DNA of 64,000 nt from Macrostomum lignano (GCA_002269645.1 NIVC01003789.1:1-64000); one strand, 5' to 3'. Positions 18,807-64,000 are shown, counted from the first letter of the stretch. The notes: generated from the letters alone by a model not told the origin. A program made the numbers and translations.

Positions 18807-19907
18807 TCAATGCAGAGGCCTGCTGACCTCAGCACCGTCATCCCTGTGCGCCATCGCTGCTGAGTGGCCAAGTCCACAACGCCGGCACCGATGAGCGAAA
18901 CGGCAGTTCCGCCTTGAGCATCCAGATTCCTTGTTGAAATCAAAGCAGGGTGGCTGCAGGCTTTGTCTTGGCCCCCGGTCAACTCTGGCAGTCGGTGCAC
19001 TCTGTGGGGCCATCAGATAGGTGGCAACTCGGCCAAGGTCAGATCCGCGCGACTCCCATGACGTCTCACCATCTTCACTCAGTCTGCACTCGTCATCAAA
19101 CCTCATGACTCGAGCCTTGTCGAACCCGAGGTCAAACAGCTCGCCAATGCGCGCAGTGTAGCGCAGGTAGTCTCGCAACTCTGACACATCAGGCTGGCCG
19201 CCCAGCCCGCTCTTCACCAACCTGCCATCATCCAGCAACTTCAGCATGATTCGAGCATTCGCCGAGATCCAGTCTCCAAACGTCAGCGAGTCAACAACAG
19301 CTTCCTTCACTCTGAAGGTGACTCTCCCTGATTTGTCAATGGACTGAGTCACTCCTGCCTCCTGCTGCTTTCGCTTGTTAATAAACTCAGGGATTCGGTA
19401 CACCTTGCCTACAGACCGACTGGGCTCTTGCTGGGCAGCATCTTCATCGTCAGACCACAGGTTAATGAGCAACTCACCGGGATTCTTTGACGTCGCAGGC
19501 CTTCGCTGAAGTTGGCTGACTTCCGCCTGAAGCAGAGCGGCCTCCTTGCGTAGCTTTAGCAGTCGGAGCTGCTTCTCAGCCTCCACCAGCTCGTCGTCCA
19601 GGCCGCCAGCCGCGTCAGACTCTTGACCATGTTGTACCGACTCGTTCGCGATAAAAGGCAGTTGCCTCTCCGCCGTAGCGCCGTTTCTTCTTTCACGCGT
19701 CGTCACTGTGGCAGCTTCATCTTGCTCCTCGTCCTCGTCGTCTGCATTCTCAAGATCGGAGGCGATGCCCTCGAGGTGCGCCCTCAGCCGCATTAAAAGT
19801 TCACATTTTCTGCCTTGTGTTGAAAGCCCTAGGCTCTGAAGCTTCTCACGTAGCGCCCTTACAGTGCTAGGCGCTTCGGATGCAACTGGCTCGTTAGGGT
19901 TTGGCAT
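18807..19907 (-). CDS. Gag-like protein with N-terminal SAP motif and C-terminal Cys/His finger
   Basis: MPNP start at 19907; TVRALREKLQSLGLSTQGRKCELLMRLRAHL (SAP-like); CFDFNKESGCSRRNCRFAHRCRRCGLGH. Confidence 0.85.
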   Translation of the reverse strand: MPNPNEPVASEAPSTVRALREKLQSLGLSTQGRKCELLMRLRAHLEGIASDLENADDEDEEQDEAATVTTRERRNGATAERQLPFIANESVQHGQESDAAGGLDDELVEAEKQLRLLKLRKEAALLQAEVSQLQRRPATSKNPGELLINLWSDDEDAAQQEPSRSVGKVYRIPEFINKRKQQEAGVTQSIDKSGRVTFRVKEAVVDSLTFGDWISANARIMLKLLDDGRLVKSGLGGQPDVSELRDYLRYTARIGELFDLGFDKARVMRFDDECRLSEDGETSWESRGSDLGRVATYLMAPQSAPTARVDRGPRQSLQPPCFDFNKESGCSRRNCRFAHRCRRCGLGHSAAMAHRDDGAEVSRPLH

Positions 19908-40276: not shown

Positions 40277-44153
<3,877 letters not shown>

Positions 44154-44231
44154 ACTCGATTCGAAATTCGCCTACTTCTAAACACACTACTGCTATATTG
44201 CTTTGTTCAGTTGCACCGTTTGCTTCGGTTA

Positions 44232-44479
44232 TATCTGTGCCCAGGTGTCTTCCAGCCTTTGTCAGCTAGCTGACCCGCATTATGTGCTGCTCATCTGTGC
44301 CCAGGTGTCTTCCAGCCTTTGTCAGCTAGCTGACCCGCATTATGTGCTGCTCATCTGTGCCCAGGTGTCTTCCAGCCTTTGTCAGCTAGCTGACCCGCAT
44401 TATGTGCTGCTCATCTGTGCCCAGGTGTCTTCCAGCCTTTGTCAGCTAGCTGACCCGCATTATGTGCTGCTCATCTGTG
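44232..44479. repeat. 60-bp tandem repeat, ~4 copies
   Basis: Identical successive 60-base lines at 44281, 44341 and 44401. Confidence 0.95.
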
Positions 44480-44569
44480 CTCCTTGCTCCACTGCAGCCG
44501 CTTGGGTATATCTACTCACTCTGTCTGTATATTCTTTCCTGTATAGTCTCAGACTCCCCTTCTTTTCTC

Positions 44570-44820
44570 TCCGCCTCTCTCTCTCTCTGTTTCTCTCTGC
44601 TTTGCTCTCTTCTCTGCCTCTCTCCCTCCTCTCTGCCTCTCTCCCTCCTCTCTGTTTCTCTCCCTCCTCTCTGCTTCTCTCCCTCCTCTCTGCCTCTCTC
44701 CCTCCTCTCTGCCTCTCTCCCTCCTCTCTGCTTCTCTCCCTCCTCTCTGCCTCTCTCCCTCCTCTCTGTTTCTCTCCCTCCTCTCTGTTTCTCTCCCTCC
44801 TCTCTGCCTCTCTCTCCTTT
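44570..44820. repeat. CT-rich low-complexity repeat
   Basis: ctctccctcctctctg variants. Confidence 0.9.
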
Positions 44821-45761
44821 CCGCCTACTAGATTTTGATTCTGTGTACGAAAAAAAATAAAATAAACGAAACAAGAAATGCATGTATTTATAGCCTCGCT
44901 AAATAAAAAACTCTATTTATTAATTGGAAAAGGGCAATCAACTTCTTGATTCAATATCACCACATGTCAACTCAGTCGTACGAGTATGACATAAAAATTA
45001 AATAGCAGTACGTAAATTATAACAAAGACCAAATTAAACTTTCTGTTTATCCATTTAGAATGAAAATAACAATTATTTGTACAACATTTTAGTCGAAAAC
45101 AAATAAAATTTTGTTATTTCCGAAAAAATACCAAATTACCAAATTTAGATTTAGTATTTCAATAAATTAAGCTCAGTGGCGCTAAAAATACAGCGCCATA
45201 ATTATAAACTTGCAGTTGCATGCATTCTATGAAATAACTACTTCTTCATTCTGAATTTTGAGCAGTGCTCTTACAATTTGTGTGAAATTAAATAATAACA
45301 CAACTAACCAATACATTGTAGACTCACTATTAAGCTTTCGCTGAAGAAAACTGTATTGTTGAAAAGTTGGGAGCAGGGCCGGGAGGGAGAGAAGCGGCCG
45401 CCGGTCACCCGCAGCTGAAACCTTAGTGTATAAAAATCGAGTTAAATTGCTTTCCATTTGATCAGCTGGCATCGAGTCAATACTGCAGAGTCAACAAGCA
45501 CACTGTGTGGAGTCACCGACTGGGGCCACTTGTTGGCCAAATTCCATTGCCGTTTTTAGGTCAATTTTTATCCCTACAATGGGTGCTTAATGTGTCTGTT
45601 AATGGAACTAATTTATTTTAATTGGAAGTCCGTTTCAAGGTCATTTTGGGCGGTTAATCTAGGGCTGAATTTGTTTTAATTCGTCAAGACTTTAGTTAAT
45701 TTTCGCGCTCGTGTAAAACTTTGTCCGTCAAAAAAACTTAGCGCAACTAACTTAAAACTTA

Positions 45762-49500: not shown

Positions 49501-50427
49501 CAATACCAGACTTAGTTTTTTGTGAGACCGTAAGCGCTGAGCTTCTGTACTGCCCCGACTGGAGGACAAACTGACTGACTGCAGACTGGTTGAAGACAAT
49601 TTCTTTCCCTCCTCTTCACCCCTTGTCTGCTCTGATCTTTCATGTACATCGCATTGCTGTCACATTGATTCCAAAATCGTTTTTCTCCCCACCCGCCCAT
49701 GCATGTTATCCAGTTCGGTGCGGTTTTCAAGTACCGGAAGAGATTAAGACCTTTCCGATTACAGTTAGTGTGTGATGCATAAAGTTTTAAAAATTTACGT
49801 GTGGTGTCTTCATTAAAAACCAAGTGGTGTCTTTCAAGCCCAAGTCAAAGAAAAACTGCCTAATAACCTAAGTCACTGGATCGATGCTTCGCTCGTAATA
49901 AAATAAATAGCATTGAAAACTAAAAATTGATTCCCATGTGAGTTGAGTTCGTTAATATTCAAAGTTCCCTCATCTCAGCCTGTGTGATGTCGAAGGCGCA
50001 ATCAGGTGAGCAATAATAGTTTTGTGGCAGGTTGCTATTTGGTGGAAAGCCAGCACATTCACAATGATGCCAAGCATCACAGCCATCACATTGAATCCAC
50101 TGGATTCTCGAACTTGCAGGTTGAATACAGATGGTAGAACTGCAGCGCTCGACATCAGCCCCCGACTTACTATGATCACGACCTCGTTCTCGACCCCTGA
50201 CACGTTTTCCAGTTGAACACCCTGCAGCACCAACTGCATCTTTCACCGACAGCACTGTCTGTCTCGGCATCGGTGGCAAAGCCAGTGGTTGCCACAGCTT
50301 TGCGTTGTGGCACCGACAGCAATCAGTAGCTTCTGTGCAGAGACAGGCCAGCTCCCGATACAAGATGCCGTTTTCATCAACTCGGCAGACGTGGTGGCAG
50401 TTGGCAATGCCCGGCATCGTAGACAGG

Positions 50428-51990
50428 TGTAGAAAAAATACTAAACTAAAGACTAGAGAGTTACTTGGAGTTAAATTGAATCTAAGATAAGCCAGTAAGT
50501 GGGCGCAGGGCCCAAACAAGTATATTTATACCAGACATTAACTTAGGGGGTTTAAATTGCAGATAATAAAGAGAGGGGGTGGAGTGCGCGACTGAGGAAA
50601 GAGGCGAGAACGGAGAGCCAATCAGAACGCAGCAAGGGAGAGAGAGAGATAAGAATAACAAGATTGAGCTGGACAGAGAAGAGAGAAAACAGAGTAAACA
50701 GAGACAAGTGAAGGTGAACTAAGAAATGACTAGGAAAGTCGCGACACTCCCCCCAAAAAATGGAACATTTTTTGAATTTTCGAGTACCAATAGAATTATG
50801 AATTAGAGTTCAAGAAACAACTTTAAAACAAATTTAACAATGGTGTACGAGCTACAAATACGACTAAGAATTTCAATACAAAAACTGTGGAGACTAGAGT
50901 GAATGCAAAATTGACCAAGAAATTTCACGTGTGCGATTTTAATGAATAAATTTTTACGAGTATAACCAATGAAAAAACTGACTGCATCTACCCTCCCCCC
51001 TAAAAAATTATTTTAATTTTTTACATTGTGAAAGAAAAAATTGAATGACGAATTAACGAGGCGATCCGGCAGGCGATGAGCGAAGAGACGATCCGGCAGG
51101 CGAGCCCTGAGGCGCCCCTGCCGAGAATTTGAACCGAGAGAGACCGAGGACACCGCAGGACGCACCCCCGGCAGACGATGAGTGAAGAGAGTCGAGACGA
51201 TCCGGCAGGCGAGCCCAGCGGCGCCCCGGCCGAGAATTTGAAACCGAGAGAGACCGAGGACACCGCAGGACGCACCCCCGGCAGACGAAGAGCGAAGAGA
51301 CGATCCGGCAGGCGAGCCCCGAGGCGCCCCGGCCGAGAATTTGAAACCGAGAGAGACCGAGGACACCGCAGGACGCACCCCCGGCAGACGATGAGCGAAG
51401 AGACGATCCGGCAGGCGAGCCCTGAGGCGCCCCGGCCGAGAATTTGAACCGAGAGAGACCGAGGACACCGCAGGACGCACCCCCGGCAGACGAAGAGCGA
51501 AGAGACGATCCGGCAGGCGAGCCCTGAGGCGCCCCGGCCGAGAATTTTAAACTTAGATTTTTATTGAGTAGTTTTTGAACCAATGAGAAGACTGAAAAGA
51601 CTGAATATATCCACCCTCCCCCCTAAAAATTTAGTAATTTTTAACTGATGACAACTGGTACATGTACAGTACAGAAAAAATACTAAACTAAAGACTAGAG
51701 AGTTACTTGGAGTTAAACTGAATCTAAGATTAGCCAGTAAGTGGGCGCAGGGCCCAAACAAGTATATTTATACCAGACATTAACTTGGGGGGGTTTGAAT
51801 TGCAGATAATAAAGAGAGGGGGTGGAGTGCGCGACTGAGGAAAGAGGCGAGAACGGAGAGCCAATCAGAAGGCAGCAAGGGAGAGAGAGAGATGAGAATA
51901 ACAAGATTGAGCTGGACAGAGAAGAGAGAAAACAGAGTAAACAGAGACAAGTGAAGGTGAACTAAAGAAATGACTAGGAAAGTCGCGACA
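50428..51990 (-). mobile_element. Small non-autonomous LTR retroelement (TRIM-like, ~1.56 kb)
   Basis: ~320-bp direct repeats 50428-50746 and ~51663-51990 with TG...CA ends; 5-bp TSD ACAGG (50423-50427, 51991-51995); GGGGGGAG PPT (minus, 50754-50747); no coding capacity. Confidence 0.85.
51062..51545. repeat. ~103-bp GC-rich tandem repeat inside the LTR element
   Basis: gacgatccggcagg recurs at 51087, 51196, 51299, 51402 and 51504. Confidence 0.9.
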
Positions 51991-52622
51991 ACAGGTTCAC
52001 CATCTGCAGCACATTTCCAAACTCTTCGATGTCACTGGTTGTAACCTCGAAAAGCAAAATCTTCTTCTCTTCGTCACTGCCACCGATCATCATCGCCTCC
52101 ATCATGTCCTGCACCGTGACCACCTGCCTCTGCTCACCTGTGGACACCCGGTTGTCGCACCGCCGCTTAATGGCCGCTCCCACACCGTCAGCAGCACCCT
52201 TGCCATGGCCAGCTTCGGTAAAGATCCACTGCCAGCGATGGATGCCGATTCGCCGCAACAGTCGATCAAACAAAAAAATTGTCTATACACTTGTTAAAGC
52301 CGTGTATAATCGGACAGACACAGTGTATTTGCGGAGTTAGGCAACTGTACTGGCCTAACTTTATGATGTTCATTAAAAACAATAAACAGTGTGTATAAGC
52401 GGGCAGTGTATATATAAAGGTGTATAGAGAGGGTAAGATAAATATACTGGCCTGTTTAGCTTCTGACATTAATCCTAAAGAATAGTAAATTGTAAAAATA
52501 GGGATGCAGCAAACAACAACAGATAAAACAACGATTGGTTAGCTAGTAGATAATGAAACCATTTTATATACTTGAACAAGCGAAGCGGAAACATTAATAA
52601 TAAATATATATAAATATGATTG

Positions 52623-52803
52623 ACACAGGTAGCACTATTTCGAAATTATGTTAGGCAATTTTCCCTAAAAGATAAAACACGGACGGCGGCGGCGGCGGCA
52701 GCAGCCAGCCATATCATAGAAACAATTGCAGAGTTTTCATTCCAATTAATATAATTTAATAGGAAATGTGCCTAGAACAATTCCGAAATAGTGCTACCTA
52801 TGT
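52623..52803. mobile_element. Short inverted-repeat (MITE-like) element
   Basis: acacaggtagcactatttcgaaattatgttaggcaattttcc is an imperfect reverse complement of ggaaatgtgcctagaacaattccgaaatagtgctacctatgt. Confidence 0.55.
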
Positions 52804-53112: not shown

Positions 53113-53601
53113 TCAAACAGAAGCTGGCGTGCACAATTTAACTCTCTTACGGCCGCTGCATCTGACTCTGACGTCAGACGTCGCTGCAGTAGCCGCCATG
53201 CTGCTCTCCGCCGCGTCATCATAGTCGTTGTCGTCCAGTCGCATCAAGGTGCACGTCGCGTTGGCCGCAGCTTTCCGTTTAGATGTGAGTTGCGGCGGCA
53301 TCACTAGCGCCTTTCGTTTAGTGGCCTCCTGGAGCTGTCGCTCTGTTGACGTAATCGGCTGCGATGGGCTGTAAGCCGCCGCCGTCGCCACCACTGCCGG
53401 CGCTATTTTTCGCTGCCGTCTTTCCCGGCTTTGCTGCTGCCAAGGTTCAGCAGCATTCGGCGGCGCCTCGTCCACAGCCGCTGGCGCCGCAGCCGATGCT
53501 ACCGATGTTGAGGCCCGCTGCTCAATCATACCCTGGACGACGGCTTGCATGTCGGAGCGAGATGCCAACAGAGCGTTCGACGCGTAGTGCCGCATGATCA
53601 T
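53113..53601 (-). CDS. Orphan ORF (MIMRHYASNALL..., 162 aa)
   Basis: Open GC-rich frame. The ATG at 53631 in the ORF track lies inside the LINE 3' end, so 53601 is the likely native start. Confidence 0.45.
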   Translation of the reverse strand: MIMRHYASNALLASRSDMQAVVQGMIEQRASTSVASAAAPAAVDEAPPNAAEPWQQQSRERRQRKIAPAVVATAAAYSPSQPITSTERQLQEATKRKALVMPPQLTSKRKAAANATCTLMRLDDNDYDDAAESSMAATAATSDVRVRCSGRKRVKLCTPASV

Positions 53602-53627
53602 TGCCGGCGATGTCTCATACAGTGACG

Positions 53628-56600
53628 CCATCTAATTTATTAGGTCCGGGTTGTTGGACATGACAACGTCCTGTGTTGAGCTGCGGAACACGTTTGGACC
53701 GACGCCGTGGCGACCCAACACTGCAACGGAACGACATTTTGGTTCCGTTTCGTGTGCAAAACACAAAAACGTCGCCGCCATCTGGGCTGGCGCCGAAGCC
53801 CGCGCTGTGTCGCCACTTGAGCAGCAGGTTAACAAAGGACGTCGGCAGGCAGAGGACGCTGCAGCTGCAGGGCTGTCCCGGAGGGGACACAGCGGGAAGG
53901 CGCGGGCGCCCATTCCGCTAGTCCCTGAACAGCCGACGCGTCGCTATGGACGGAGGGTTGGCGCCGCCCAGGGAGGTCCCCCAGTGTCGCCAGCAGCTAT
54001 AGTGCTCTCTGGAAAGGAGAGTTCAGCCCTGCGGGTGGCCCGAAGGTAGCGCATGAGCTGATTAAAGTTTTCGGGTTTGCACGCTTCAGTAATAGATGTG
54101 TGTGGCCCGAGGTAAGTGAGTCTGGCCCGCGTGAAGGCGGGACAGATGCTGACGAAATGCTCAGCGGTTTCGTCACCTGAGTTGCAGAAACTACAGGTGG
54201 CGTTGGTGGCGTTGCCCTGCAGGTGCTGGTGCCTGGAGAAGCAGCCGTGACCAGAGAGGTTCATGGTGGCAGCCCGGATGTCTCTGCGCGAGAGGCGCAA
54301 GAGGAGCTTCCGGAGCTGGTGAGAGGGCTGAGGGACAGCGCCTCTGGATTGCCTGCAGGTAGTGCAGTTCGCCCAAGTCGAGCGGTGCTGGGTCCTGATC
54401 CACGCTTTGATGCGCGAGTCGATGACACAGCCAGGAATCGGGACAAGGGGTTCGGGACCGAGAGAGGAGCCGGAGGCACCAACTTTTGCAAGGGTGTCAG
54501 CCAACTCATTTCCTCGGATCCCCACATGCCCCGGAACCCACTTAAGGGTAATTTTGTTGGTGGAACCCAACACGTTGAGGAGTTTGATACAGTCGAGGAC
54601 TGTTGCAGAGTTGGTACTGCAGCCACTGATGGCGTGCAAGGCGGCTTGGCTGTCCGAATGGAAAATGATGTTCTTACCAGTAACGCCAGTGGCGAGAAGC
54701 TCTGCAGTGCAGGAGCTGATGGCCAGAACTTCATTTTGAAAATCACTGGAGTTGACCCCAGTGTATTGAGCGTGGGTAGCGATGACCTTCCCGTTCAGAA
54801 AGATTCCAACACCAAAGCCGGTGTTGGCTGACTGCTTAGAACCGTCGGTGTAACAATGAAGCTCACCAAGGTTCCATTGGTCATTGATGTTATCGCGCGA
54901 GTCGATAGCTACGGAGTAGCGCTGTCTCAGGTTGAGCGTTGAGGCAATGCGATCGGTGAAGACGCGATTGGCCTGACACTCGTTGAGAAAGTTGAGGCTC
55001 AGGTCGCTATGCGGGACAAGGTTCCGCTTAGCAGGTGCTCTCATGTAAATGAATTTGACGCCGGCATCAATTAGACGCCGCGTCGTTCTAGCCGCCTCAC
55101 CCCTGACGAAGAGGTCAAGAGGCGGTAGATTAAGGAAGGCCCCCATGCCAGCAAAGGGCGTGGACCTGGTGGCGTTGCAGATGAGCCTACACGCTCTGCC
55201 TTGGATCGTGTTGAGCAGGTCTGCATGGCTTTTGACCTGGGTAGCGCTAACCCAGACAACCGAGGCGTACGTAATGGCAGGTCTAACTACGGAAGTATAG
55301 ATCCACCAAAGCCGCTTTGGGGATAGACCCCAAGAAGTGCCAAGTGCTCGTCGGAGCTGGGCCAGGATGGCTGAGGCACGCTTGGCTTTTGCTTTCACGT
55401 GGTAGGACCAGTTGAGCCGGTGGTCAAGTGTGACCCCGAGACATCTGGTCTGGTGCGCGAAGGCAATATCTCTGCCGTAGAGCTGCAGAGGACGTATGTT
55501 CCAGCGTAGTCTGCTGGTAAACATAATGGCAACGGTTTTGGGCTCAGAGAGTTCCAGACCATTGTCATTGGCCCAGGATTCTGCTTTGCGGATAAAGCTC
55601 TGCATCAGATCCCTGAGCGTGCTGGGAGACGGTCCTGCCACAATGGCCGTGACGTCATCAGCATACCCGACTTTGAAGACGGGGTCGGGTCGGGAGTCAC
55701 TCAGAAGAGCGTCCATGACCAGGTTCCAGAGCGTCGGGGTGAGGACTCCGCCTTGGGGTCCACCCTTACAGACTCTGGTGGAGGCAGTTTGCCCAAGAAG
55801 TTGGGCAGTGACCGTACGGTTGGAGATCATGTACATGATCCACCGTATGAGGGTAGCATGAGCTTTGCGATTTTGAAGGGCCCTCTGAAACGCTTCAAAG
55901 ATAACGTTGTCGAAGGCGCCAACAATGTCAAGAAAGAGAGCCAGGGCGTAACCGTCACCCAGTACCGCCCGTTCAATCTTCTCGACAATCGCATGCAGGG
56001 CGCTGTCAGTCGACCTCCCGGTACGGAAGGCGTGCTGATTATTGCTGAGGGGCATCGCTGTCAGCTCGCAGGAGAGCAGCCGCCAGAGAATAAGCCTCTC
56101 AGTGAGCTTAAGCATTGCTGACGTTAAGCTAATAGGCCGGAAGGCCTTGACGCTTTGGTAGTCACCCTTCCCAGGTTTGGGAATAAAGACTACCCGAGCT
56201 TCAGTCCAGCATTTGGGAACGTATCCCAGCTGGATAGAGGCCCGCATAAGATTGCGGGTGAGTCTCAGGAACGAGGGTATCTTGGCTGCTTCACGAAGGA
56301 GAACAGGGTAGATACCATCAGGTCCAGGAGATTTGAAGGGTTTGAAGGTTCTGACCGCACGAGCGATTAGGTCTTCAGTGACAATGCCCGCCGCTAGGGT
56401 GGCTCCATCCATCGAATGGTTGGACTCCGGTCTAGCAGTAGGTACCCTCGGGAAGAATGTGCTAAGCATATGCTGAAGCACTTCTTCAGGGTCTTTAGTA
56501 AGAGAGCCATCATCTTTTTTTATCATGGCTAATTTGGACATTTTGTCCATTGTAAGGGCCTTGACAAGCCTAGAAGTAGGTCTGTCTTGATCCAATTCAT

Positions 56601-57225
56601 TGCAGAATTGGCGCCACTTACATTCCTTGGCCTTGCGCACTTCAGATTTGAAATTGCGGGAGGCTTGCCGGAAAAGCTCCATGTCCTCCGGGTTTCCGGT
56701 CTTCATGACACGGCGATGAAGGCTTTTGGCCTTCCGCCTGAGTTTCCCCAGGTCCGGGTTCCACCACGGCGCCGAGGTCTTGCCTTTGTAGGCGCGAGCA
56801 GGACAAGCCGCTTCGTAGGCTGCAATAATGCAACCTGTCAGCGTCTCAGCCATATGATCCACATCCTCGCAGGTCTCAATCGGACGTAAGTCCGTGAGTT
56901 CCTGCAGGTGCAGATCAAGGGCAGCCTTGTAGGCCGCCCAATCAGTGTTGCGGATATTGCGTCTCCAAGTGATCGGAGACTGGGTTTTAGTATCCGCGAT
57001 GTTAAAGGCGATAAAGCAGTGGTCAGACAGGGAGGGCTCCTCAGACCAGACTCTCCACTCCTCAACTCTGTCAAAGAGTCTTGGGGTAACGAGTGTGGCG
57101 TCGAGGACCTCGGTCCATCTGCCATTATTAAAGGTAGGAGTGCTGCCGCGGTTGCAGAGCATGAGGTTTGTGTTAGAGATGAGGGCCAGAAGCTCCTCTC
57201 CTCTAGTGTTGGTATCGGATGATGC
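53628..57225 (-). mobile_element. 5'-truncated non-LTR retrotransposon with RNase H (I-group; Loa/Lian-like)
   Basis: 9-bp TSD ACAGTGACG at 53619-53627 and 57226-57234; starts in the APE C-terminus (SSDTNTRGEELL); ~316-bp 3' UTR ending AATAAATTAGATGG. Confidence 0.88.
53944..57222 (-). CDS. LINE ORF2: partial APE, RT, RNase H, CCHC finger
   Basis: KSPGPDGI, FRPISL, QHAFR, FLDIVGAFDNV, GGPQGGVLTPTLW, GYADD, CYTDGS..EVLAI..SDSQAAL..WVPGH..GNELADTLAK, CSFC..ETAEHF..C; >1070 aa uninterrupted. Confidence 0.93.
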   Translation of the reverse strand, partial: SSDTNTRGEELLALISNTNLMLCNRGSTPTFNNGRWTEVLDATLVTPRLFDRVEEWRVWSEEPSLSDHCFIAFNIADTKTQSPITWRRNIRNTDWAAYKAALDLHLQELTDLRPIETCEDVDHMAETLTGCIIAAYEAACPARAYKGKTSAPWWNPDLGKLRRKAKSLHRRVMKTGNPEDMELFRQASRNFKSEVRKAKECKWRQFCNELDQDRPTSRLVKALTMDKMSKLAMIKKDDGSLTKDPEEVLQHMLSTFFPRVPTARPESNHSMDGATLAAGIVTEDLIARAVRTFKPFKSPGPDGIYPVLLREAAKIPSFLRLTRNLMRASIQLGYVPKCWTEARVVFIPKPGKGDYQSVKAFRPISLTSAMLKLTERLILWRLLSCELTAMPLSNNQHAFRTGRSTDSALHAIVEKIERAVLGDGYALALFLDIVGAFDNVIFEAFQRALQNRKAHATLIRWIMYMISNRTVTAQLLGQTASTRVCKGGPQGGVLTPTLWNLVMDALLSDSRPDPVFKVGYADDVTAIVAGPSPSTLRDLMQSFIRKAESWANDNGLELSEPKTVAIMFTSRLRWNIRPLQLYGRDIAFAHQTRCLGVTLDHRLNWSYHVKAKAKRASAILAQLRRALGTSWGLSPKRLWWIYTSVVRPAITYASVVWVSATQVKSHADLLNTIQGRACRLICNATRSTPFAGMGAFLNLPPLDLFVRGEAARTTRRLIDAGVKFIYMRAPAKRNLVPHSDLSLNFLNECQANRVFTDRIASTLNLRQRYSVAIDSRDNINDQWNLGELHCYTDGSKQSANTGFGVGIFLNGKVIATHAQYTGVNSSDFQNEVLAISSCTAELLATGVTGKNIIFHSDSQAALHAISGCSTNSATVLDCIKLLNVLGSTNKITLKWVPGHVGIRGNELADTLAKVGASGSSLGPEPLVPIPGCVIDSRIKAWIRTQHRSTWANCTTCRQSRGAVPQPSHQLRKLLLRLSRRDIRAATMNLSGHGCFSRHQHLQGNATNATCSFCNSGDETAEHFVSICPAFTRARLTYLGPHTSITEACKPENFNQLMRYLRATRRAELSFPESTIAAGDTGGPPWAAPTLRP

Positions 57226-57833
57226 ACAGTGACGTGGAGAGCAAATCTATTGCGCAGCTGGATCATCGACTGCTGCGACGCGGACAAAGCATCGTCGTCG
57301 GTGTCCTCGCCGTCGTCTGCGCTGGTGTTACCGCTAATGCTGCTGCTGCTGCTGCTGCTGCTGTCTGAAGCATTTGCGTCATCGTCGGCTGCGGCGGCGG
57401 CGGCGGCGGCGGCGGCATCGCCAATTTCGTCTGCAGCAGCCCTAACGACTTGGTCTGCGGCGCTCCCCAGTAGTCGAGCACGAGAACTGCTACCGCCGTA
57501 ACCGAATTGCTCGACGAGCTTGCTGTAGTCGGCAAGCACGAGGCGCCATTCTTCGCTGGTCAGCAGCTTTTTCTGCTTTTTCGCGTGGTGTTCAGGGGCG
57601 TCAAGCTTACGATAAAAGTCGTGTTGCATCCGGAGCACTCGCAGGCGCTTTTTAAATAGCAAACAGCGCTCCTCCAGATTGTCGGCGATATCGGCTGGTA
57701 GGCGAAGACGCCGAATAACCAGCAGGCGATGCCCGGGATCGTCTTCGATGTAGAGAATAATAAAGCGCATACATTTAATCAGCGACCGTGCCGATGCTGC
57801 TACTAGTCTGGCGTAGAGCGTCTGCGGCGGCAT
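57226..57833 (-). CDS. Orphan ORF (MPPQTLYARL..., ~204 aa) whose last codons were separated by the LINE
   Basis: Helical/basic N-half and acidic Ala/Ser-rich C-half; rejoining at the TSD gives ..ALHVTV* (stop at 53617-53615). Confidence 0.55.
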
Positions 57834-58335
57834 TTGGGTCAGCCAGACAGAATAGAAAGTCTCTTGGAGGCTGCGGCTGAGTAGTCGGCGACTCCGAGCA
57901 TGCAGAAGCCTCAGCTATTGGCTGCGGCGGCGGCGGCGGCGGCGGCGGCGGAAGAGTCGCTGCGGCATCTTGGTCATCGCTGCAGTCGTAATTTTCACCG
58001 TCCACGGCTGTGGAGGCCGAATATGGTACTTTCGCCATCTTCTCAAAGCTTGATAGTACCAGGTCGGCGATTGCTTTCCACTTCTCCTCAAAGCCGTCGA
58101 TGTTTTGATCGTGAACACCTGTCGAAGGGTCGTAGTATAGCGATCTCAGCACTCTTAGCTGCAGCACGGCTGGCGAATCGGGTCTGAATGGCGCGGACAG
58201 GGAGCCGCGTTTCTTCTTTTCGGCAGCAGCGGTGGCAGCGTCGATGCCAGTGGCGGCGGAGATGGCGGACGCCTCGTTTGGCGGCGGGTCGGCAGACGCT
58301 GGTGTTGCTTTGGCTGCGGCGGCGGCGGATTCCAT
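57775..58335 (-). CDS. Orphan ORF (MESAAAAAKA..., 186 aa) overlapping the next ORF by 59 bp
   Basis: Open frame with a non-low-complexity core (LRVLRSLYYDPSTGVHDQNIDGFEEKWKAIADLVLSSF); acceptor-like cag 15 nt upstream of the ATG. Confidence 0.5.
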   Translation of the reverse strand: MESAAAAAKATPASADPPPNEASAISAATGIDAATAAAEKKKRGSLSAPFRPDSPAVLQLRVLRSLYYDPSTGVHDQNIDGFEEKWKAIADLVLSSFEKMAKVPYSASTAVDGENYDCSDDQDAAATLPPPPPPPPPQPIAEASACSESPTTQPQPPRDFLFCLADPNAAADALRQTSSSIGTVAD

Positions 58336-59761
58336 CTTTCGGTGCTTGGCCTGTCGAGTTATTAAAGGATAGAATGGCTATATGCTGAGTAGTATATGGC
58401 CCTAACACAGCTGCTCGCTAATACACAACTGCCCGCTAATACACGACTGCTCCTTATCCCGATTCCGAGTCAATATGCGTCTATGGCAGCCCGCAGGTAC
58501 ACAGTGTATGCCCGAATTTACACGTCGCAACTGCTCACCTGGTGCTTGTCGCTATCCCTAAACCAGCACGCTGTGATAAATAGGCAATTAGATAATAGCA
58601 TGCACGGTAAGCAATTATTTAGGCCCTAGACAAACCTACTTGGAGCGTTTGGAGATTTTAAAGCTATTAATCCTAATCGCCTATCGCCGGTCGGCGAGTC
58701 CTACCAGTCTTTCTCCAATAGCCGCAGGTACAGTACAAGAAAAGAAAGAACACGAGGGAACACAAACCAAAAGATTTAGAGAGTGATAATCCTATATGAT
58801 ACAACTGATAATTGGCTAGACGATTTAATTTGATTACTCAAGTTACAGGATTCAAGCAATTTCGCGGCGCAGATAATTAGACTGATGATAACGAATAGTA
58901 ACGATTAATAATAATGATTATATTACGCACTGACAAGCGGATCTCAGCTTGAAGAAGAAGAAGGAGGCACCGAACACGACCACGGAGAAGACTCCTAACC
59001 CCTGGCCTAAGCCAGAACCTACACTCAAACGAGAGCCCTGCCGAACCGACCGTTCAACGGAGTACCGACTAAATTCTATCGGCACTGCCCTTCAGTGTAA
59101 CACTGAGGCCCTCGGGGTCGAGGCCGCGTACTTGATCAGATCCGACAGTCTCTATCTAACCGCGCTTGATAGCGACGACTTCAGACAGAAATTTGCCGTA
59201 GACGTTACGCCACAAGACTACTGCGGTTGGGCGGGAACAAAAAAATATGGACCGGGGGTGATGAATTCAGGCGCCTCAAAGCGCGAACCAACAAGAGAGG
59301 AGAAATCGGGCCACCGGCCGGGAACTGGACAAGACAAAACCGGGGAAAGGGAGCGAGAAGAAGGCGAGATCCGATTGCCAAAACACACTTTCATATATAG
59401 TCAGAGTCGCAACCCCTCAAAACCCCCTCAAGCCGGGTGGTGGTCGTCTGGCCGGCCGCTTGCTTAAGCCGAATTGCACTGTGCCCGCGGCGCCGGGTAG
59501 AATTGAAACTTGCCGCGTGCCAGGGTCCAGGCCGGTTCTGATTGGCTGGCCGCACAAAGCTGGGGTTCGCAGACAAACTCAACCCTCCGCTGAGTCACAA
59601 ATGGCGTCTGACGTCTAGCCTGTTTACGCAAAATTGATTCTAACTAACAAGGAAAAAGTACACCAAAAACGTATGACTAAACTAAAGCAAAATAATAATT
59701 CAATAACAATAATGCAAAACCTAACTAATAGAATACAAGGCTATCGTAAAAGATGCTCACA

Positions 59762-60431
59762 CTACAACGCGCATTGCTCGCAATACGTTTCGGTTCTTGC
59801 ATGCTTCTTCGAGCTGATGGTCTGCTCACTTCTAAGGATCAGGCTGCGCCAGTGCCAGTCCACGCGCTGCTTTGTAGACCAGCCGGCAGCCGTGTCCTTT
59901 ACATTGGCGCTCACGGGGCGAGCCAGGCACCAGGCAGCATGCTTCGCCGTAAAGTGGCGTTTAAGTGCATCCATTCGCATGATAACGGAACATCCATCTG
60001 CAGGACACACTCGCTTCTTGCTGCTGCTGCTGCTGTTGCTGGCATCGGCGCTGGCGGCGGATGCACCTGCAGCAGCTGTAGCCGAGGAGGCAGCATCCGT
60101 AGCAGCAGGCACTGCTGTTTTGCCTATTGTTGAGTTTATTAGACGAGGAAACAATATATATAGGTTCTGATACGTGGAAAGAGCGCACGAATATAAAATT
60201 GTCCCGCACACGCACGCACGCACAATTATTTCCAGGCAAAGGCGTGCTCACCTGTTGTTGGAATCATTATTACCGCCGACCTGTTCGGCGGCGAAATCAG
60301 CGGGCTGTTACGCTGGCTACAAGGCACGCCAGCAGCTGGTATTGGTGGCCAACAGAAACTAGCCGAATATACCTGTTCAGCGGCGGCGGCGATTGGTGGA
60401 GCAGCTGCTTCAGACTCGTGCTCGCTGGTGG

Positions 60432-60466
<35 letters not shown>

Positions 60467-60513
60467 TCAGCTGCGGCGTCGTCGCCAAAGAGGAGGCGCA
60501 GAAAGCTGAACAT
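59762..60513 (-). CDS. Spliced C2H2-type zinc-finger protein; exons 60513-60252, 60123-59762
   Basis: CAG|gtgagc donor and ttcctcgtctaataaactcaacaatag|GC acceptor join IPT-G-KTAV in frame; CPADGCSVIMRMDALKRHFTAKH; terminal CEQC. Confidence 0.6.
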
Positions 60514-61794
60514 TTGCGGAAATGTATGGATATGAATGTGGCACTTTATCCTTAAGTTAAAGTTAAGTTAAGTTAAGTCAAAGGCTCTAATGTTCGCGCC
60601 TGCTAAAGCCGCAGAAATTATGTGGATTATACGAGTTGTTGGTTGCTTGCAGCGGGCGGGGTACAGAAATGCTGGACCTCTTTAAGAATGAACTGCAGTG
60701 GTTGAGGAGGGGAACGGTCTGGGTCTAGAGTCTGCGATCGATGCATAGTCTATGGTTTAAACCCCCCCCTACTAAAACAGTACACTGAGTGTGTCTAACG
60801 AAGTAGAGAAGAGGGACGGTCCGGGGTCTATAGTCTATGGTTAACCCCCCCCCCCTAAAAGCAGCACGCTAGCTGAGTGAGTCTACAACGAAGTATTGAA
60901 TCGATACTCAAAGTATACAGTTTAGTAGTTCCAAAAGGTGGTTTTCAAAAGGAGATGTAGATTGCTTGTTTCATATATTTCAAAAAGAGGGTGTCGAAAA
61001 TCGCAACGAGATTAATACTTACTACCGCCGGTATTGAGACTGTAAAATTGTATATACGCGGCACATTAGCCACAACAAAACTGCAGACAACAACAATATT
61101 GCAATATAGAAACCCACGAGAATGGAAATGCCCCAAAAATACCCCTTTAAGTATGAAACAAGACGAACTGGTGCTATTCCTTCCTTTAAAAGCGATAACT
61201 AAAAAACACACAAAAACAAAGGGAAAGTATAACTGTTACAGCTACTAATCGCCTCTGCATGGCTTGGATGTGCCATTTATCTTTTTATGGGAATGTTGCT
61301 AAGCACAATTTCGCGATAGTGCTACTGTGCCAACACGCCTTACGGAAATGTATGAAAATGAATGTAGCACTTTTCCGATGTTTTGTCTGGCACTTTATCC
61401 TTAGTTACAGTAGCGTTAAGGCTCTAATGCTCGCGCCTGCTAAAGCAGCAAAAGGTGCACATAAAGCTGCAGAATAGTTGAATTTTTACTGTCCCTGCAG
61501 TGGCTCGTATAATAGCTGTAACACGAAATTGTTGGAACTTGAACGGCCAAATGTGAACTTTGTTGCGTTGCTGACGCACGAGTAATATTACCTAGCTTTG
61601 TGTTTACCTGCGTTCTACGGCGCATCCTGCACTATGTGAGCAGCCTAGCAACAACAACAAAATCCACTACTAATGCATATAAGGCCGGCTTGATTGCTAG
61701 GAGGGGAATCGGGATTTGGGAATATTTAAGGGCAGGGAAAGCAGTGCGTCATCGTTTATCTGCCCCGTTGTTCATCAATCCAGCTAATCAAGCT

Positions 61795-62655
61795 CTAATC
61801 AGACTCTGCGCGAGCATCATCCTGCAGCTGGCAGCCGGTGCACCGGAATATGTCGTGCTTCACGTGAATACACTGGCCGCCGGAGTTGACCCGCCTGACA
61901 AAGTCTATGGGCAGATCGGCGGGAGGGACATGGCCAGCGAGCATCACCGGGCCGCTCCATTCAGTCAGAATGAGGGCCTTGTGCTTGGCGTTGATGGTAA
62001 ATTTATCGCGATTGAGCAGCAGAAGCAGCTGCTGCGAGGAGGCCTGCGAGACGCTTAGCTCATCAAAGAACAGACACCTATGAATGCCCAGGCGCAGACC
62101 GTCGAAGGCAAAACCCTCGTCAAGGTTCGGAGTGAATACGGTCTCACGACCAAAATGCAGGCCCACCATTGCTGATTTGCCCACTCCACTGGCACCCCAT
62201 AGGTACAGGATTGAGGGCACAACTACAGTCTGCCGCATCGCTGTGCAGATTGCCTGCTGAATCGCGCAGCTTCCACCTAGCGCGATGCGGTGTGTTGCCA
62301 CATTGCTGCACCCCGGCTGATCCGTATTTGAAGCGGCTGTGTCGCCGCGTGGAGGCACCTGCATGCATTGTACAGGCAGAGGGTGACATGCCCCGCACAT
62401 ACTCGGCCAGACAATGGTGCTGGGGAGCAGTGACACGCCGTGCTCTTCGGCACGAATTCTGCGCATCTGTTGCACCGTTGTAAAGTAATCCATGGTCTGC
62501 TTCAAAAGCAGTGGATTACCGCAGACGAGATGGGGGTCGTCTGGTCGCGGTGCCATACTCCCCAGCGGATATGACATAGCCCATCTGTACAGTTGGACAA
62601 CGCGGGACAGACAAGCGTCGTCGATTTCGGTGATGGCGGCTGTGGGGTCGTGCAT
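61795..62655 (-). CDS. Superfamily 3 helicase (CRESS-Rep/parvovirus NS1-like ATPase domain)
   Basis: Walker A LYLWGASGVGKS (62196-62173), FAFDG, Walker B CLFFDE (62073-62059), B' LLLLNRDKFTINAKHK, motif C-like PVMLAGH, Arg-finger-like FVRRV. Confidence 0.8.
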   Translation of the reverse strand: MHDPTAAITEIDDACLSRVVQLYRWAMSYPLGSMAPRPDDPHLVCGNPLLLKQTMDYFTTVQQMRRIRAEEHGVSLLPSTIVWPSMCGACHPLPVQCMQVPPRGDTAASNTDQPGCSNVATHRIALGGSCAIQQAICTAMRQTVVVPSILYLWGASGVGKSAMVGLHFGRETVFTPNLDEGFAFDGLRLGIHRCLFFDELSVSQASSQQLLLLLNRDKFTINAKHKALILTEWSGPVMLAGHVPPADLPIDFVRRVNSGGQCIHVKHDIFRCTGCQLQDDARAESD

Positions 62656-62664
62656 GGTCACCCG

Positions 62665-63476
62665 TCATATTTCGGCAGCTGCTGAGCGCACGCTCCTGAT
62701 CTCGGCGCATGTCCATCCCTGCACCGCAAAGGTGTGCAGGCTGGAGCCAGACGCGAAGAAGGAATTGTGCATGGCATTGGATCGCAAAAATATCAACAGC
62801 GATCGTGTCTTGTCCACAGGGCAAGATGGAGTCGGGGCGTACGCGTCAGTCATGTGCGCGGGAGTCAGCATAAATTCGTTATCTGCCAGGCCTTATTACA
62901 TACAGTAGTAGTAGTTGTTGTTTGTTGTGGTGGCGTTGGGGGATGGGTTAAAGAGTTTCTTAAAATCGCATGTTCTACGTAGAAGATAATTGTTATGAGT
63001 TTTTCAGACACTTGTGAAACGACGCAAACACTCACTCACTCACCTATGGCAAACTGTGTCGCGAAGTCGCCGCTCCAGGTGCCGTTGATCATCAGCTTCA
63101 TCTGGGGCGCGTTCTTGACGTAGTACAGCTGAATCACCGACATTGCACGATGCGAACGCCGGCTCGCATTAGCCGAAAACATTATGTCGTTTGGTATGGT
63201 GTCGCTGGGATGCAGCGACACGGACGATGCCAGAAGGCGCGAGCTCGTTCCCTTCGGCGAGGTGCTAGCCGGCTGCTGCTGCCGTTCCTCCCCCTCTTCG
63301 TGGAACAGTGGGATCTCGCCGGCCGGGCAGGTCGTCTCTGCGAGGTTATATTTAGCTGTCGCCTCCATCTCCCTGGCCGCCAGCTCGTAGCCAGAGGCCA
63401 AAGCCCGCTCGCGCTGCGTAGCACTCGACTGCGGTACGGCTGCGGCGGTGGCTCCTGTGTCGTCGGGAAACAACAA
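62665..63476 (-). CDS. Spliced upstream ORF in frame with the helicase; exons >=63476-63044 and 62882-62665
   Basis: ATA G|gtgagt donor (63043) and ggcag|AT acceptor (62883) join QFAI-D-NEFMLTPAH in frame; ends at TGA 62667-62665; further upstream exons probably extend beyond the window. Confidence 0.5.
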
Positions 63477-64000
63477 TGTGAAAATGATACTACTGTAATA
63501 TGAGAGAATGTAGCATGAGCAAAAGTGTGAGCGCGAAATGCACGTAACCTACCTCTCGGGTAGAACGTCGTCGGCGGGCGGCTCGACCGAGGTCTCGGTG
63601 AGGCTGTCGGCGTCATGAATCGGAAGGCAGCAGTAGGAGCAGCAGGGCGAGTGGTGAAGCGCCAGGGCGCGCCGATGCCGCACGGGCCGATCCTAGGCTG
63701 CCGTAGAAGGTGCGGCTTCGGTGACGCTTGAGCAGCAGCGGCAGCAGAGTCAGTAGTATGGAATGAGGGCGACGCCTTCGGAATAAACTGCAGAGTCGGC
63801 GGCTGGTCGCCGCAGCCGGCGACGTGGTCAGCAGGATGCTGCTGCTGTTCGTCGTCGCTACCGCTGCTGTAGACAATTAATCGCGGCAGCTTGTTAAGCA
63901 AGCCGCGCTGCTGGCTTGGTTCCGGCGTCTCATTGGCTATGATGCGCCGAGAGGGCGTTGCGCTGCTCGTCTGCGGCGTGCTGACATCTTCTAATAGCAT

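What the first reader, a model, noticed from the sequence alone, without database searches (positions are those of the whole stretch)
53113..64000. Compact single-strand cluster of orphan ORFs with a viral-type SF3 helicase: candidate endogenous virus-like element
Seen: after removing the LINE (and a possible insert at 58379-59599), at least six ORFs lie head-to-tail on the minus strand: a spliced N-terminal ORF, SF3 helicase, spliced C2H2 protein and three orphans, with a 59-bp overlap and a ~13-nt stop-to-start gap. Introns are short and repeat-free, unlike the host genes in this window. Known: SF3 helicases are hallmarks of small DNA viruses and related mobile elements, not core eukaryotic genes; I recall a planarian extrachromosomal virus-like element (PEVE) with Rep-like helicases. 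No capsid, HUH or integrase motif was recognised. Inference: an undescribed integrated DNA virus or mobile element extending past 64000.
Basis: partly seen in the sequence, partly recalled or inferred. Interest (0 to 1): 0.82.

Follow-up and report, generated by a model that had tools for sequence, protein, structure and literature searches.

The report
Captured virus replication gene, not provirus
The ATPase gene at the end of this animal-genome window descends from the replication protein of a small circular DNA virus but now looks like a host gene (introns, dead nuclease site, here one premature stop), and nothing ties its neighbouring orphan reading frames to a virus.

Summary
The "viral-type SF3 helicase" call is correct. 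ORF 61795-62661(-) has no Pfam or PDB sequence hit by itself. An exhaustive HMMER search found 15 relatives. The family profile matches HUH+SF3 Rep proteins at 99.3% probability, and one of those Reps lies on a 2.9-kb contig with the layout of a circular Rep-encoding ssDNA (CRESS) virus genome. An AlphaFold model (helicase core pLDDT above 90) matches papillomavirus E1, AAV Rep40/68, parvovirus NS1, circovirus Rep and CRESS Reps before any cellular AAA+ protein.

The gene is not a fresh provirus. It has two to three exons. Its HUH-like domain lacks the catalytic His and Tyr, and the motif C Asn is replaced. It belongs to a small unnamed family that includes a Macrostomum lignano hypothetical protein and intron-bearing genomic contigs. 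This copy carries one in-frame stop.

The other ORFs (C2H2-like, 186, 201 and 172 aa) have no homologues, no viral domain, and no linkage to Rep relatives at other loci. Three of the segments scored have codon usage no better than antisense controls. No capsid, origin hairpin or termini were found.

Verdict: an endogenised Rep-derived gene. The multi-gene virus-like element is not supported.

The parts
61795..64000 (-). Rep-derived gene in a three-exon model. Exon 1 is >=64000..63553 and is tentative. Exon 2 is 63454..63044 and exon 3 is 62891..61795. The frame runs off the window at 64000. As it stands the gene is broken by one in-frame stop. No frameshift was detected over the 368 columns that align with the intact relative L006.
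   Evidence: Joined as they stand, the exons give 651 codons with one internal stop. tblastn of the model against L006 gives one HSP at 32% identity, E 5e-36. Codon usage is coding-like for exons 2 and 3 but not for exon 1.
63455..63552 (-). Intron 1 of the Rep-derived gene: 98 nt, GT-AG, phase 1.
62892..63043 (-). Intron 2 of the Rep-derived gene: 152 nt, GT-AG, phase 1.
62527..63146 (-). Degenerate HUH-endonuclease-like domain, which spans intron 2. The positions that align with Rep motif II (His-hydrophobic-His) and with the motif III Tyr do not carry those residues.
   Evidence: Alignments A1 and A9. hhalign of A9 against the HUH+SF3 Reps gives probability 65%, E 6e-5, collinear with the helicase match. 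The Reps' own N-domains match the geminivirus Rep catalytic domain (Pfam PF00799 at its cutoff; PDB 1l2m at 8e-4).
61816..62277 (-). SF3 helicase P-loop core. Walker A (GASGVGKS) is at 62173-62196 and Walker B (LFFDEL) at 62056-62073. Motif C is at 61930-61947 and reads VMLAGH, without the sensor-1 Asn. The RR segment is at 61888-61902. A family-specific motif, H-x3-C-x-G-C, lies at 61831-61857, and a C-x6-7-C motif at 62245-62271.
   Evidence: phmmer against 1.84 billion representatives gives E 4e-24 to P0001. hhalign of A6 against A3 gives 99.3%, E 3.6e-20. The AF2 core has pLDDT above 90. Foldseek top hits are E1, AAV Rep, NS1, PCV2 Rep and CRESS Reps.
61340..61453 (-). Copy A of a direct repeat of about 110 nt.
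60514..60616 (-). Copy B of the same direct repeat (88-92% identity). It abuts the ATG of the C2H2-like ORF.
59762..60513 (-). C2H2-like orphan gene in a two-exon model (60513..60252 and 60123..59762, intron 128 nt GT-AG), giving 207 aa. It has one Cys2-His2-like motif and is rich in Ala and Ser.
   Evidence: Joins in frame. No Pfam, PHROG or PDB hit. Codon usage is no better than the antisense controls.
58336..59761 (.). It has no detectable termini, and the plus-strand 172-aa ORF inside it has no hits.
57775..58335 (-). Orphan ORF of 186 aa. It overlaps the next ORF by 59 nt.
   Evidence: Codon usage is weakly coding-like.
57226..57833 (-). Orphan ORF of about 201 aa before it runs into the LINE. 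It is helical and charged, and has a sub-threshold Chromo_2 hit (E 0.004).
   Evidence: Codon usage is coding-like.
53628..57225 (-). Nested 5'-truncated LINE (RT and RNase H; ORF 53944-57162), flanked by 9-nt target-site duplications at 53619-53627 and 57226-57234.
53113..53627 (-). Orphan ORF downstream of the LINE. The ORF finder lists it as 172 aa because it borrows a start codon from the LINE's 3' end.
   Evidence: Codon usage is not coding-like.
61290..61340 (-). Solo copy of a motif of about 45 nt that also forms the inverted pair at 52623-52803.
52623..52803 (.). Inverted pair of the same ~45-nt motif (42-nt arms, 83% complementary, 97 nt apart). It resembles a miniature inverted-repeat element.

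Best explanation
The gene at 61795-64000(-) is an endogenised descendant of a CRESS-DNA-virus-type Rep (HUH endonuclease plus SF3 helicase) that has lived for a long time as a eukaryotic nuclear gene. It acquired spliceosomal introns and a long low-complexity N-terminal extension. It lost the nuclease catalytic residues and the sensor-1 Asn of helicase motif C. It kept Walker A and Walker B, and it gained conserved Cys/His motifs. Such a protein can most plausibly still bind ATP and assemble on DNA as an SF3-type ring, but it cannot nick an origin and so cannot start rolling-circle replication (inferred). I think its most likely role is as a host protein, either a decoy that interferes with related viruses or a DNA-binding ATPase put to a host use (inferred). 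The copy in this window has one in-frame stop between the dead nuclease domain and the helicase. It is therefore either a recently disabled copy or is expressed only as the helicase part. The other minus-strand ORFs are unrelated lineage-specific ORFs, some possibly non-coding, together with ordinary repeats (a LINE and short repeat families). They are not genes of the same virus.
For: Shown. The exhaustive search found 15 relatives. Nine form a close family, and the rest are 370-440-aa Reps with HUH motifs. hhalign between the family and those Reps gives 99.3%, E 3.6e-20. The Rep P0015 sits on L001, a 2.9-kb contig with an origin-like hairpin upstream of Rep, an ORF2 with an Arg-rich N-terminus, and 11-nt terminal redundancy. 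The family profile also hits P0016, which has Viral_Rep and RNA_helicase above their Pfam cutoffs. For the fold, the AF2 model has pLDDT 77.6 with a core above 90, and the top Foldseek hits are SF3 helicases only.

Signs of host residence. The window gene has two GT-AG introns. L008 and L009 share a GT-AG intron directly after Walker B, and probably a second one further upstream. The only named member is Macrostomum lignano PAA62424.1, a single-member cluster lying next to COG7 and EME1 genes.

Dead nuclease. His-U-His and Tyr are absent in all five aligned members, including the uninterrupted 444-aa ORF of L006.

Neighbours. They have no homologues or domains and are not conserved beside Rep relatives elsewhere. 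No origin-type nonamer occurs in the window.
Against: The host species and the copy number of this gene are unknown, because none of the window's proteins is in the searched collection. The window copy is only 32-47% identical to the other members and is not syntenic with the M. lignano locus, so repeated insertion or transposition of the family is not excluded. The match of the N-domain to HUH domains is only moderate (65%, E 6e-5). Expression was not tested. The orphan ORFs were searched only with Pfam, PHROGs, PDB sequences and pattern scans, not with the exhaustive search or with structure prediction, so a very divergent capsid could have been missed. The element may continue beyond 64000.
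Confidence: 0.72

Rival explanations
1. The whole minus-strand cluster, and possibly more beyond 64000, is one integrated virus-like or mobile element that carries a Rep-derived helicase together with element-specific genes (C2H2 protein and orphans).
For: All the ORFs lie on one strand with short introns and one 59-nt overlap. Relatives of the helicase gene lie in different genomic neighbourhoods in the window and in M. lignano. Repeated ~45-nt and ~110-nt motifs lie within and at the edge of the cluster. Transposons that carry captured Rep genes have been described (Tuber melanosporum; PMC3198968, section 8).
Against: No other ORF has any viral or transposase similarity. None recurs beside a Rep relative at L002-L009. 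The nuclease is catalytically dead, so the Rep could not mobilise the element by nicking. There is no origin hairpin. The ~45-nt motifs, if taken as termini, would leave the Rep gene outside the segment they bound, and no target-site duplication was seen at them. Several of the ORFs fail a codon-usage test.
Confidence: 0.13
2. The helicase ORF is simply a decaying fossil, a neutral pseudogene of a single ancient Rep insertion, with no current function. The apparent family conservation would reflect several independent recent insertions from related viruses.
For: The window copy has one in-frame stop. In the M. lignano copy the N-terminal and helicase parts are in different frames. Members are only 25-52% identical to one another.
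Against: The features that separate the family from viral Reps are shared by all members: the lost His and Tyr, the replaced motif C Asn, and the new CxxC, Cx6-7C and H-x3-C-x-G-x-C motifs. The family also has shared intron positions and long intact ORFs (444 aa in L006, 332 aa in L003). This pattern points to descent from an already modified ancestor under constraint, not to independent neutral decay. The M. lignano frame change may be a long-read indel error.
Confidence: 0.12
3. The ATPase is a divergent cellular AAA+/P-loop protein and its likeness to viral helicases is convergent or due to chance.
For: The single sequence gives only sub-threshold generic P-loop hits in Pfam (AAA_16, AFG1). 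Cellular AAA+ proteins (NtrC-type, RuvB, Hda) do appear further down the Foldseek list.
Against: The profile-profile match to HUH+SF3 Reps is 99.3% over Walker A through motif C and beyond. The 26 best PDB structural hits are all viral SF3 helicases, and the first 50 named BFVD hits are viral replication proteins: Rep, NS1, E1 and related SF3 helicases. The upstream domain aligns collinearly with the HUH domain.
Confidence: 0.03

Closest known systems
Rep proteins of CRESS-DNA viruses (Cressdnaviricota; HUH endonuclease plus SF3 helicase), represented here by the uncultured Reps P0010-P0012, P0015 and P0016 and the contig L001
   Same: The domain order is the same (nuclease-like domain, linker helices, SF3 P-loop core). 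Walker A, Walker B and the B' region align at 99.3% profile probability. The fold matches CRESS Reps in BFVD and the PCV2 Rep ATPase in the PDB.
   Different: The window gene has no His-U-His, no catalytic Tyr and no motif C Asn. It has spliceosomal introns and a low-complexity N-terminal extension of about 290 aa. It has extra Cys/His motifs. No origin hairpin or capsid gene lies nearby, and it is chromosomal.
Endogenous Rep-like sequences of circular ssDNA viruses in eukaryotic genomes (Liu et al. 2011, PMC3198968)
   Same: It is a single captured Rep gene in a eukaryotic chromosome, with a disabling mutation in this copy.
   Different: The family here is intron-bearing, shares derived features across distant members and retains long open frames. 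This suggests long-term retention and not a simple fossil. I found no paper describing this family.
PEVE (Girardia tigrina extrachromosomal virus-like element), PIVE (Schmidtea) and the 'Platyhelminthes parvovirus-related sequences'
   Same: These are flatworm-associated, carry an SF3 helicase of viral type, and include integrated forms.
   Different: They are described as Parvo_NS1/PPV_E1_C-type (PMC3198968 section 8; PMC10433990). No member of the present family hits Parvo_NS1 at E<=1, and its nearest full-length relatives have geminivirus/circovirus-type HUH domains. PEVE proteins themselves did not come back as hits in any search, and I could not compare them directly.
Geminivirus-like Rep inside a terminal-inverted-repeat transposon of Tuber melanosporum (PMC3198968)
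   Same: A Rep-derived gene lies next to other ORFs and short inverted repeats.
   Different: In Tuber there are 42 copies of more than 95% identity, 37-bp terminal inverted repeats and recognisable transposase genes. Here there is no transposase, no demonstrated termini, and the copy number is unknown.

Membership tests
SF3 helicases (viral replicative helicases) | Walker A and Walker B in a compact P-loop core of about 100 residues | tested here: met
   GASGVGKS and LFFDEL lie 34 residues apart, aligned with the Reps.
SF3 helicases (viral replicative helicases) | Motif C ending in a conserved Asn (sensor 1) | tested here: not met
   The window has VMLAGH where the full Reps have ..VSN. The family has LAGH, LAAV, ASV or SSV at this position, and only P0003 keeps an Asn nearby.
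SF3 helicases (viral replicative helicases) | SF3 fold: helical N-terminal bundle plus AAA+-like core, closest to E1, Rep40 and NS1 | tested here: met
   Foldseek against the PDB gives E1 at 2.8e-7, AAV Rep40/68 at 5e-6, B19 NS1 at 2e-5 and PCV2 Rep at 4e-5. Against BFVD, CRESS Reps score from 5e-9.
CRESS-DNA virus Rep (HUH superfamily endonuclease plus SF3) | HUH motif II (His-hydrophobic-His) for metal binding | tested here: not met
   The aligned segment reads SLLIFLRS in the window. It is also lost in L006, L007 and M. lignano, and P0005 keeps one His.
CRESS-DNA virus Rep (HUH superfamily endonuclease plus SF3) | Motif III catalytic Tyr (Y-x-x-K) | tested here: not met
   No Tyr occurs at the aligned position in any of the five family members.
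CRESS-DNA virus Rep (HUH superfamily endonuclease plus SF3) | Homology of the helicase domain to bona fide Reps | tested here: met
   hhalign gives 99.3%. phmmer gives E 2e-5 to 1e-3 against P0009-P0012 and P0015. The family profile hits P0016, which has Viral_Rep and RNA_helicase.
CRESS-DNA virus genome (integrated) | Stem-loop origin with the conserved nonanucleotide in the loop | tested here: not met
   It is present in L001 at 28-56. The same nonamer is absent from the whole window, and no comparable hairpin lies near the gene.
CRESS-DNA virus genome (integrated) | Capsid gene, typically with an Arg-rich N-terminus and a jelly-roll fold | tested here: inconclusive
   No window ORF resembles ORF2 of L001 or L005, and there are no Pfam, PHROG or PDB hits. 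No structure predictions were available for the orphans.
Parvovirus NS1 / PEVE-PIVE type elements | Parvo_NS1 (PF01057) domain | tested here: not met
   No hit at E<=1 for the window ORF, L006 or P0001-P0013. Structural similarity to NS1 is at the general SF3 level only.
Parvovirus NS1 / PEVE-PIVE type elements | Terminal inverted repeats or hairpins bounding the element | tested here: inconclusive
   The only inverted repeats are a ~45-nt motif pair at 52623-52803 and a solo copy at 61290-61340, which would leave the helicase gene outside the bounded segment. The far end lies beyond the window.
Domesticated (exapted) viral gene | Orthologues under purifying selection across species, and expression | not testable with these tools
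   The evidence is indirect: derived motifs and intron positions are shared across distant members, L006 has an intact 444-aa ORF, and M. lignano has an annotated protein. No transcriptome, host genome set or close orthologue pairs were available.

The most novel reading that the evidence does not exclude
The family represented here is a previously undescribed, anciently domesticated Rep gene of flatworm-like animals. It is a nuclease-dead SF3 ATPase with new zinc-binding-type motifs, kept by selection (for instance as a guard against related CRESS viruses). A bolder version is that the window cluster is a new kind of mobile element built around such a Rep.
Probability: 0.4. Interest if true: 0.65.

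Novelty: new variant of a known kind. Interest (0 to 1): 0.45.

Why it matters
Captured Rep genes of small DNA viruses are common genomic fossils, but examples that have clearly become long-lived, spliced, remodelled host genes are few. This family has only nine close relatives among 1.84 billion representative proteins, matches no Pfam model, and has one named member (a Macrostomum lignano hypothetical protein). It would give a dated host link for an uncultured CRESS virus lineage. It would also be a candidate case of a viral replication protein reused without its nuclease. The result also corrects an over-reading: a same-strand run of orphan ORFs next to one viral-type gene is not evidence of a provirus.

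Tried and rejected
- Single-sequence searches of the helicase ORF gave nothing specific: Pfam and PHROGs, PDB phmmer and the word-index protein search. Single-sequence AF2 failed with pLDDT 33.
- Word-index searches with family alignments recovered only P0015, P0003, P0004 and P0016, so they gave no copy-number information.
- Exact look-ups of the window's own proteins failed, so the host species could not be identified.
- Scans of viral contigs with the Rep alignment, the helicase ORF, the 201-aa ORF and the 186-aa ORF found no relatives. The two metagenome scans found none either. Alignments A2, A4 and A6 were too divergent for pattern scans.
- The window's orphans show no similarity to any fetched locus, including the two orphan ORFs near the M. 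lignano gene. The cluster shows no similarity to the rest of the window.
- No Rfam family matches in the window.
- The PEVE paper (PMC116598) is not held, and searches for the run accessions found no paper.
- I considered and rejected selenocysteine or an alternative genetic code as an explanation for the in-frame stop. No evidence supports either, and the intact relative has an ordinary sense codon at that position.


Full report
**Setting**

The window is animal nuclear DNA. It carries forkhead, TRIM-NHL and riboflavin-transporter-like exons, a DIRS-like retroelement and abundant simple repeats. GC content is about 0.31-0.58 in 2-kb windows. No Rfam family matches anywhere in it. The finding covers its last 11 kb, read on the minus strand.

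**Observation**

- The listed ORFs are present.
- The LINE is real. ORF 53944-57162 hits RVT_1 (7e-28) and RNase_H (1e-10), and only the tail of the endonuclease domain, so it is 5'-truncated. The same 9-mer lies at 53619-53627 and 57226-57234, a target-site duplication that sets the insert at 53628-57225.
- The 59-nt overlap between the 186-aa ORF and the next ORF is at 57775-57833.
- Two canonical GT-AG phase-1 introns (98 and 152 nt) join three open segments into one frame of 651 codons that ends with the ATPase.
- A 128-nt GT-AG intron joins two segments into a 207-aa C2H2-like protein.
- The 'possible insert' at 58379-59599 shows no termini.
- ORF length alone means little here, because the plus strand carries ORFs of 117-178 aa across the same stretch.
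- I ran a crude codon-usage log-odds test, trained on five host exons of this window and checked on the LINE, the DIRS RT and the helicase core. It scores Rep exons 2-3, the helicase and the 201-aa ORF as coding, and the 186-aa ORF weakly so. Rep exon 1, both C2H2 exons and the 172-aa ORF score no better than the antisense ORFs. The training set is tiny and the Ala-rich low-complexity sequence confounds it, so this is only a hint.

**What the ATPase is**

Taken alone, the 288-aa ORF (61795-62661) gives only generic sub-threshold P-loop hits. An exhaustive phmmer search of 1.84 billion representative proteins found 15 hits.

Nine of them form a close family: P0001-P0008 and P0013, at E 4e-24 to 3.5e-4 and 29-47% identity. 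Five others (P0009-P0012 and P0015, E 2e-5 to 1e-3) are proteins of 157-443 aa, four of them full length (370-440 aa), and their N-terminal halves carry the three HUH-endonuclease motifs. The fifteenth hit (P0014, 2489 aa) was not examined.

- P0015 reaches the Pfam cutoff for the geminivirus Rep catalytic domain.
- A profile of the five hits the geminivirus Rep nuclease structure 1l2m (8e-4) with its N-terminal half and AAV Rep40 (1.6e-4) with its C-terminal half.
- P0015 lies on L001, a 2942-nt contig. At 28-56 this contig has a 9-bp-stem hairpin whose 11-nt loop reads CTAGTATTACA. By established knowledge this has the form of the conserved loop nonamer of CRESS-virus origins. Rep follows the hairpin, then an overlapping ORF2 with an Arg-rich N-terminus, then a third ORF. 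The contig has 11 nt of terminal redundancy. L005 is a partial relative with the same Rep-ORF2 order.
- Profile-profile comparison of the close family (A6) with these Reps (A3) gives 99.3% probability, E 3.6e-20. The match runs from before Walker A to beyond motif C.
- The family profile also hits P0016, which has Viral_Rep and RNA_helicase above their cutoffs.
- With the 15-sequence alignment AlphaFold gives pLDDT 77.6, with the core above 90. Foldseek returns papillomavirus E1 (2.8e-7), AAV Rep40/68, B19 NS1 and PCV2 Rep from the PDB. From BFVD it returns CRESS Reps (from 5e-9) and parvoviral NS1. Cellular AAA+ proteins come only lower in the list.

The sequence evidence places it with CRESS-type Reps and not with parvoviral NS1: no family member hits Parvo_NS1 at E<=1.

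**A remodelled Rep, not a viral one**

Upstream of the helicase, exons 2-3 align collinearly with the nuclease domain of the Reps. The profile comparison of this domain alone gives 65%, E 6e-5.

- At the motif II position the window has SLLIFLRS where the Reps have H-L-H-x-Y-L-K-F.
- At the motif III position there is no Tyr.
- The same losses are seen in L006, L007, M. lignano and (one His kept) P0005.
- In motif C the Reps' ..VSN becomes ..LAGH..LAAV or ..ASV.
- The family has its own conserved CxxC, C-x6-7-C and C-terminal H-x3-C-x-G-x-C motifs.

L006, a 3.4-kb metagenome contig, has an uninterrupted 444-aa ORF covering both domains. It aligns with the window's model in a single HSP of 368 columns (E 5e-36). 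The window copy therefore has no detectable frameshift there, and L006 has a sense codon where the window has its single stop.

**Residence in eukaryotic genomes**

- The only named member, P0001, is PAA62424.1, a 'hypothetical protein BOX15_Mlig013629g1' of Macrostomum lignano. It forms a one-member cluster. It lies on a 220-kb scaffold next to COG7 and EME1-MUS81 genes.
- Its upstream low-complexity ORF runs into the start of the conserved N-domain, as in the window. Its N-domain and helicase parts are in different frames, which could be a real frameshift or a long-read indel error.
- L008 and L009 are AT-rich contigs (GC 0.37 and 0.33). They share a GT-AG intron directly after Walker B, and the downstream exon keeps every family motif. 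The ORF ends suggest a second shared intron upstream.
- Introns therefore differ between lineages, as in old cellular gene families.
- The window's host is unidentified, because none of its proteins is in the collection. It shares no nucleotide similarity with the M. lignano locus. A flatworm host is an inference from the nearest named relative.

**The neighbours**

- The C2H2-like protein and the 186-, 201- and 172-aa ORFs have no significant Pfam, PHROG or PDB hits.
- The 186- and 201-aa ORFs have no relatives in the viral contig scans, nor the 201-aa ORF in the metagenome scan; the C2H2-like and 172-aa ORFs were not scanned there.
- They do not resemble ORF2 or ORF3 of the CRESS contigs, nor anything near Rep relatives at L002-L009.
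- The window has no origin-type nonamer.
- Two repeat families lie in the cluster. One is a ~110-nt direct repeat at 60514-60616 and 61340-61453, whose second copy abuts the ATG of the C2H2-like ORF. The other is a ~45-nt motif found three times: an inverted pair at 52623-52803 and a solo copy at 61290-61340, with none expected by chance. If those motifs were element ends they would bound the C2H2-to-172-aa segment and leave the Rep gene outside, and I saw no target duplication at them.

**Mechanism (inferred)**

A protein with intact Walker A/B and an SF3 fold, but without the nuclease His and Tyr and without sensor 1, can probably still bind nucleotide and assemble on DNA. It cannot initiate rolling-circle replication, and it may unwind poorly. 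I consider two roles most plausible: interference with related viruses as a decoy, or a host DNA-binding ATPase. In this window the single stop either disables the gene or leaves a helicase-only product.

**Comparison and novelty**

The kind of feature is known: Rep genes of circular ssDNA viruses captured by eukaryotic genomes (PMC3198968). The PEVE/PIVE and 'Platyhelminthes parvovirus-related' elements are of a different type, Parvo_NS1 (PMC3198968; PMC10433990). I found no description of this intron-bearing, nuclease-dead family. I rate it a new variant of a known kind, of moderate interest.

The multi-gene provirus reading gets about 0.13.

Noticed in passing
window 52623-52664(+), 52762-52803(-), 61290-61340(-): A motif of about 45 nt occurs three times, where none is expected by chance. 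Two copies form an inverted pair 97 nt apart, like a miniature inverted-repeat element. The third lies 8.5 kb away, between the Rep-derived gene and the C2H2-like ORF.
   Followed up: partly
window 60514-60616 and 61340-61453: A direct repeat of about 110 nt (88-92% identity) flanks an AT-rich stretch of about 720 nt that has G-runs and an internal 85-nt-spaced repeat (60745-60854). One copy ends exactly at the ATG of the C2H2-like ORF.
   Followed up: partly
window 16168-19979 (-): A DIRS-like retroelement with three long ORFs: gag-like (390 aa), RT-bearing (546 aa) and tyrosine-recombinase-like (281 aa). This is judged from the ORF translations only.
   Followed up: no
window 49959-50519 (-) and 51974-52273 (-): One ORF has a PHD-finger-like end (Pfam PHD E 4e-4, below the cutoff). 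A nearby ORF contains 'GHGKGAADGVG'. They may be fragments of a single transposon-derived gene just downstream of the cluster.
   Followed up: partly
L001 1-2942 (Logan SRR13494277); L005 (Logan SRR14381426): L001 looks like a complete uncultured CRESS-DNA virus genome. It has an origin-like hairpin at 28-56, a 443-aa Rep, an overlapping ORF2 with an Arg-rich N-terminus, a 162-aa ORF3 and 11-nt terminal redundancy. L005 is a partial relative. Their Reps are the nearest full-length relatives of the window's gene.
   Followed up: partly
L002 9462-10759 (Macrostomum lignano NIVC01001938.1): In the M. lignano family member the N-domain and the helicase part are in different reading frames, so the annotated protein (PAA62424.1) covers only the helicase part. 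This could be a frameshift or a long-read assembly indel. The window copy is interrupted in the same general region by its stop.
   Followed up: partly
L008 1097-1700 and L009 282-970: The AT-rich family members have a GT-AG intron at the same position directly after Walker B, and apparently a second shared intron upstream. Neither intron is present in the window or in L006.
   Followed up: yes
window 24706-26023, 29009-29915, 40860-41760, 44203-44883, 51013-51583: Long tandem or minisatellite arrays create spurious ORFs of 150-420 aa on both strands. This is a reminder that ORF length is a poor guide in this genome.
   Followed up: no
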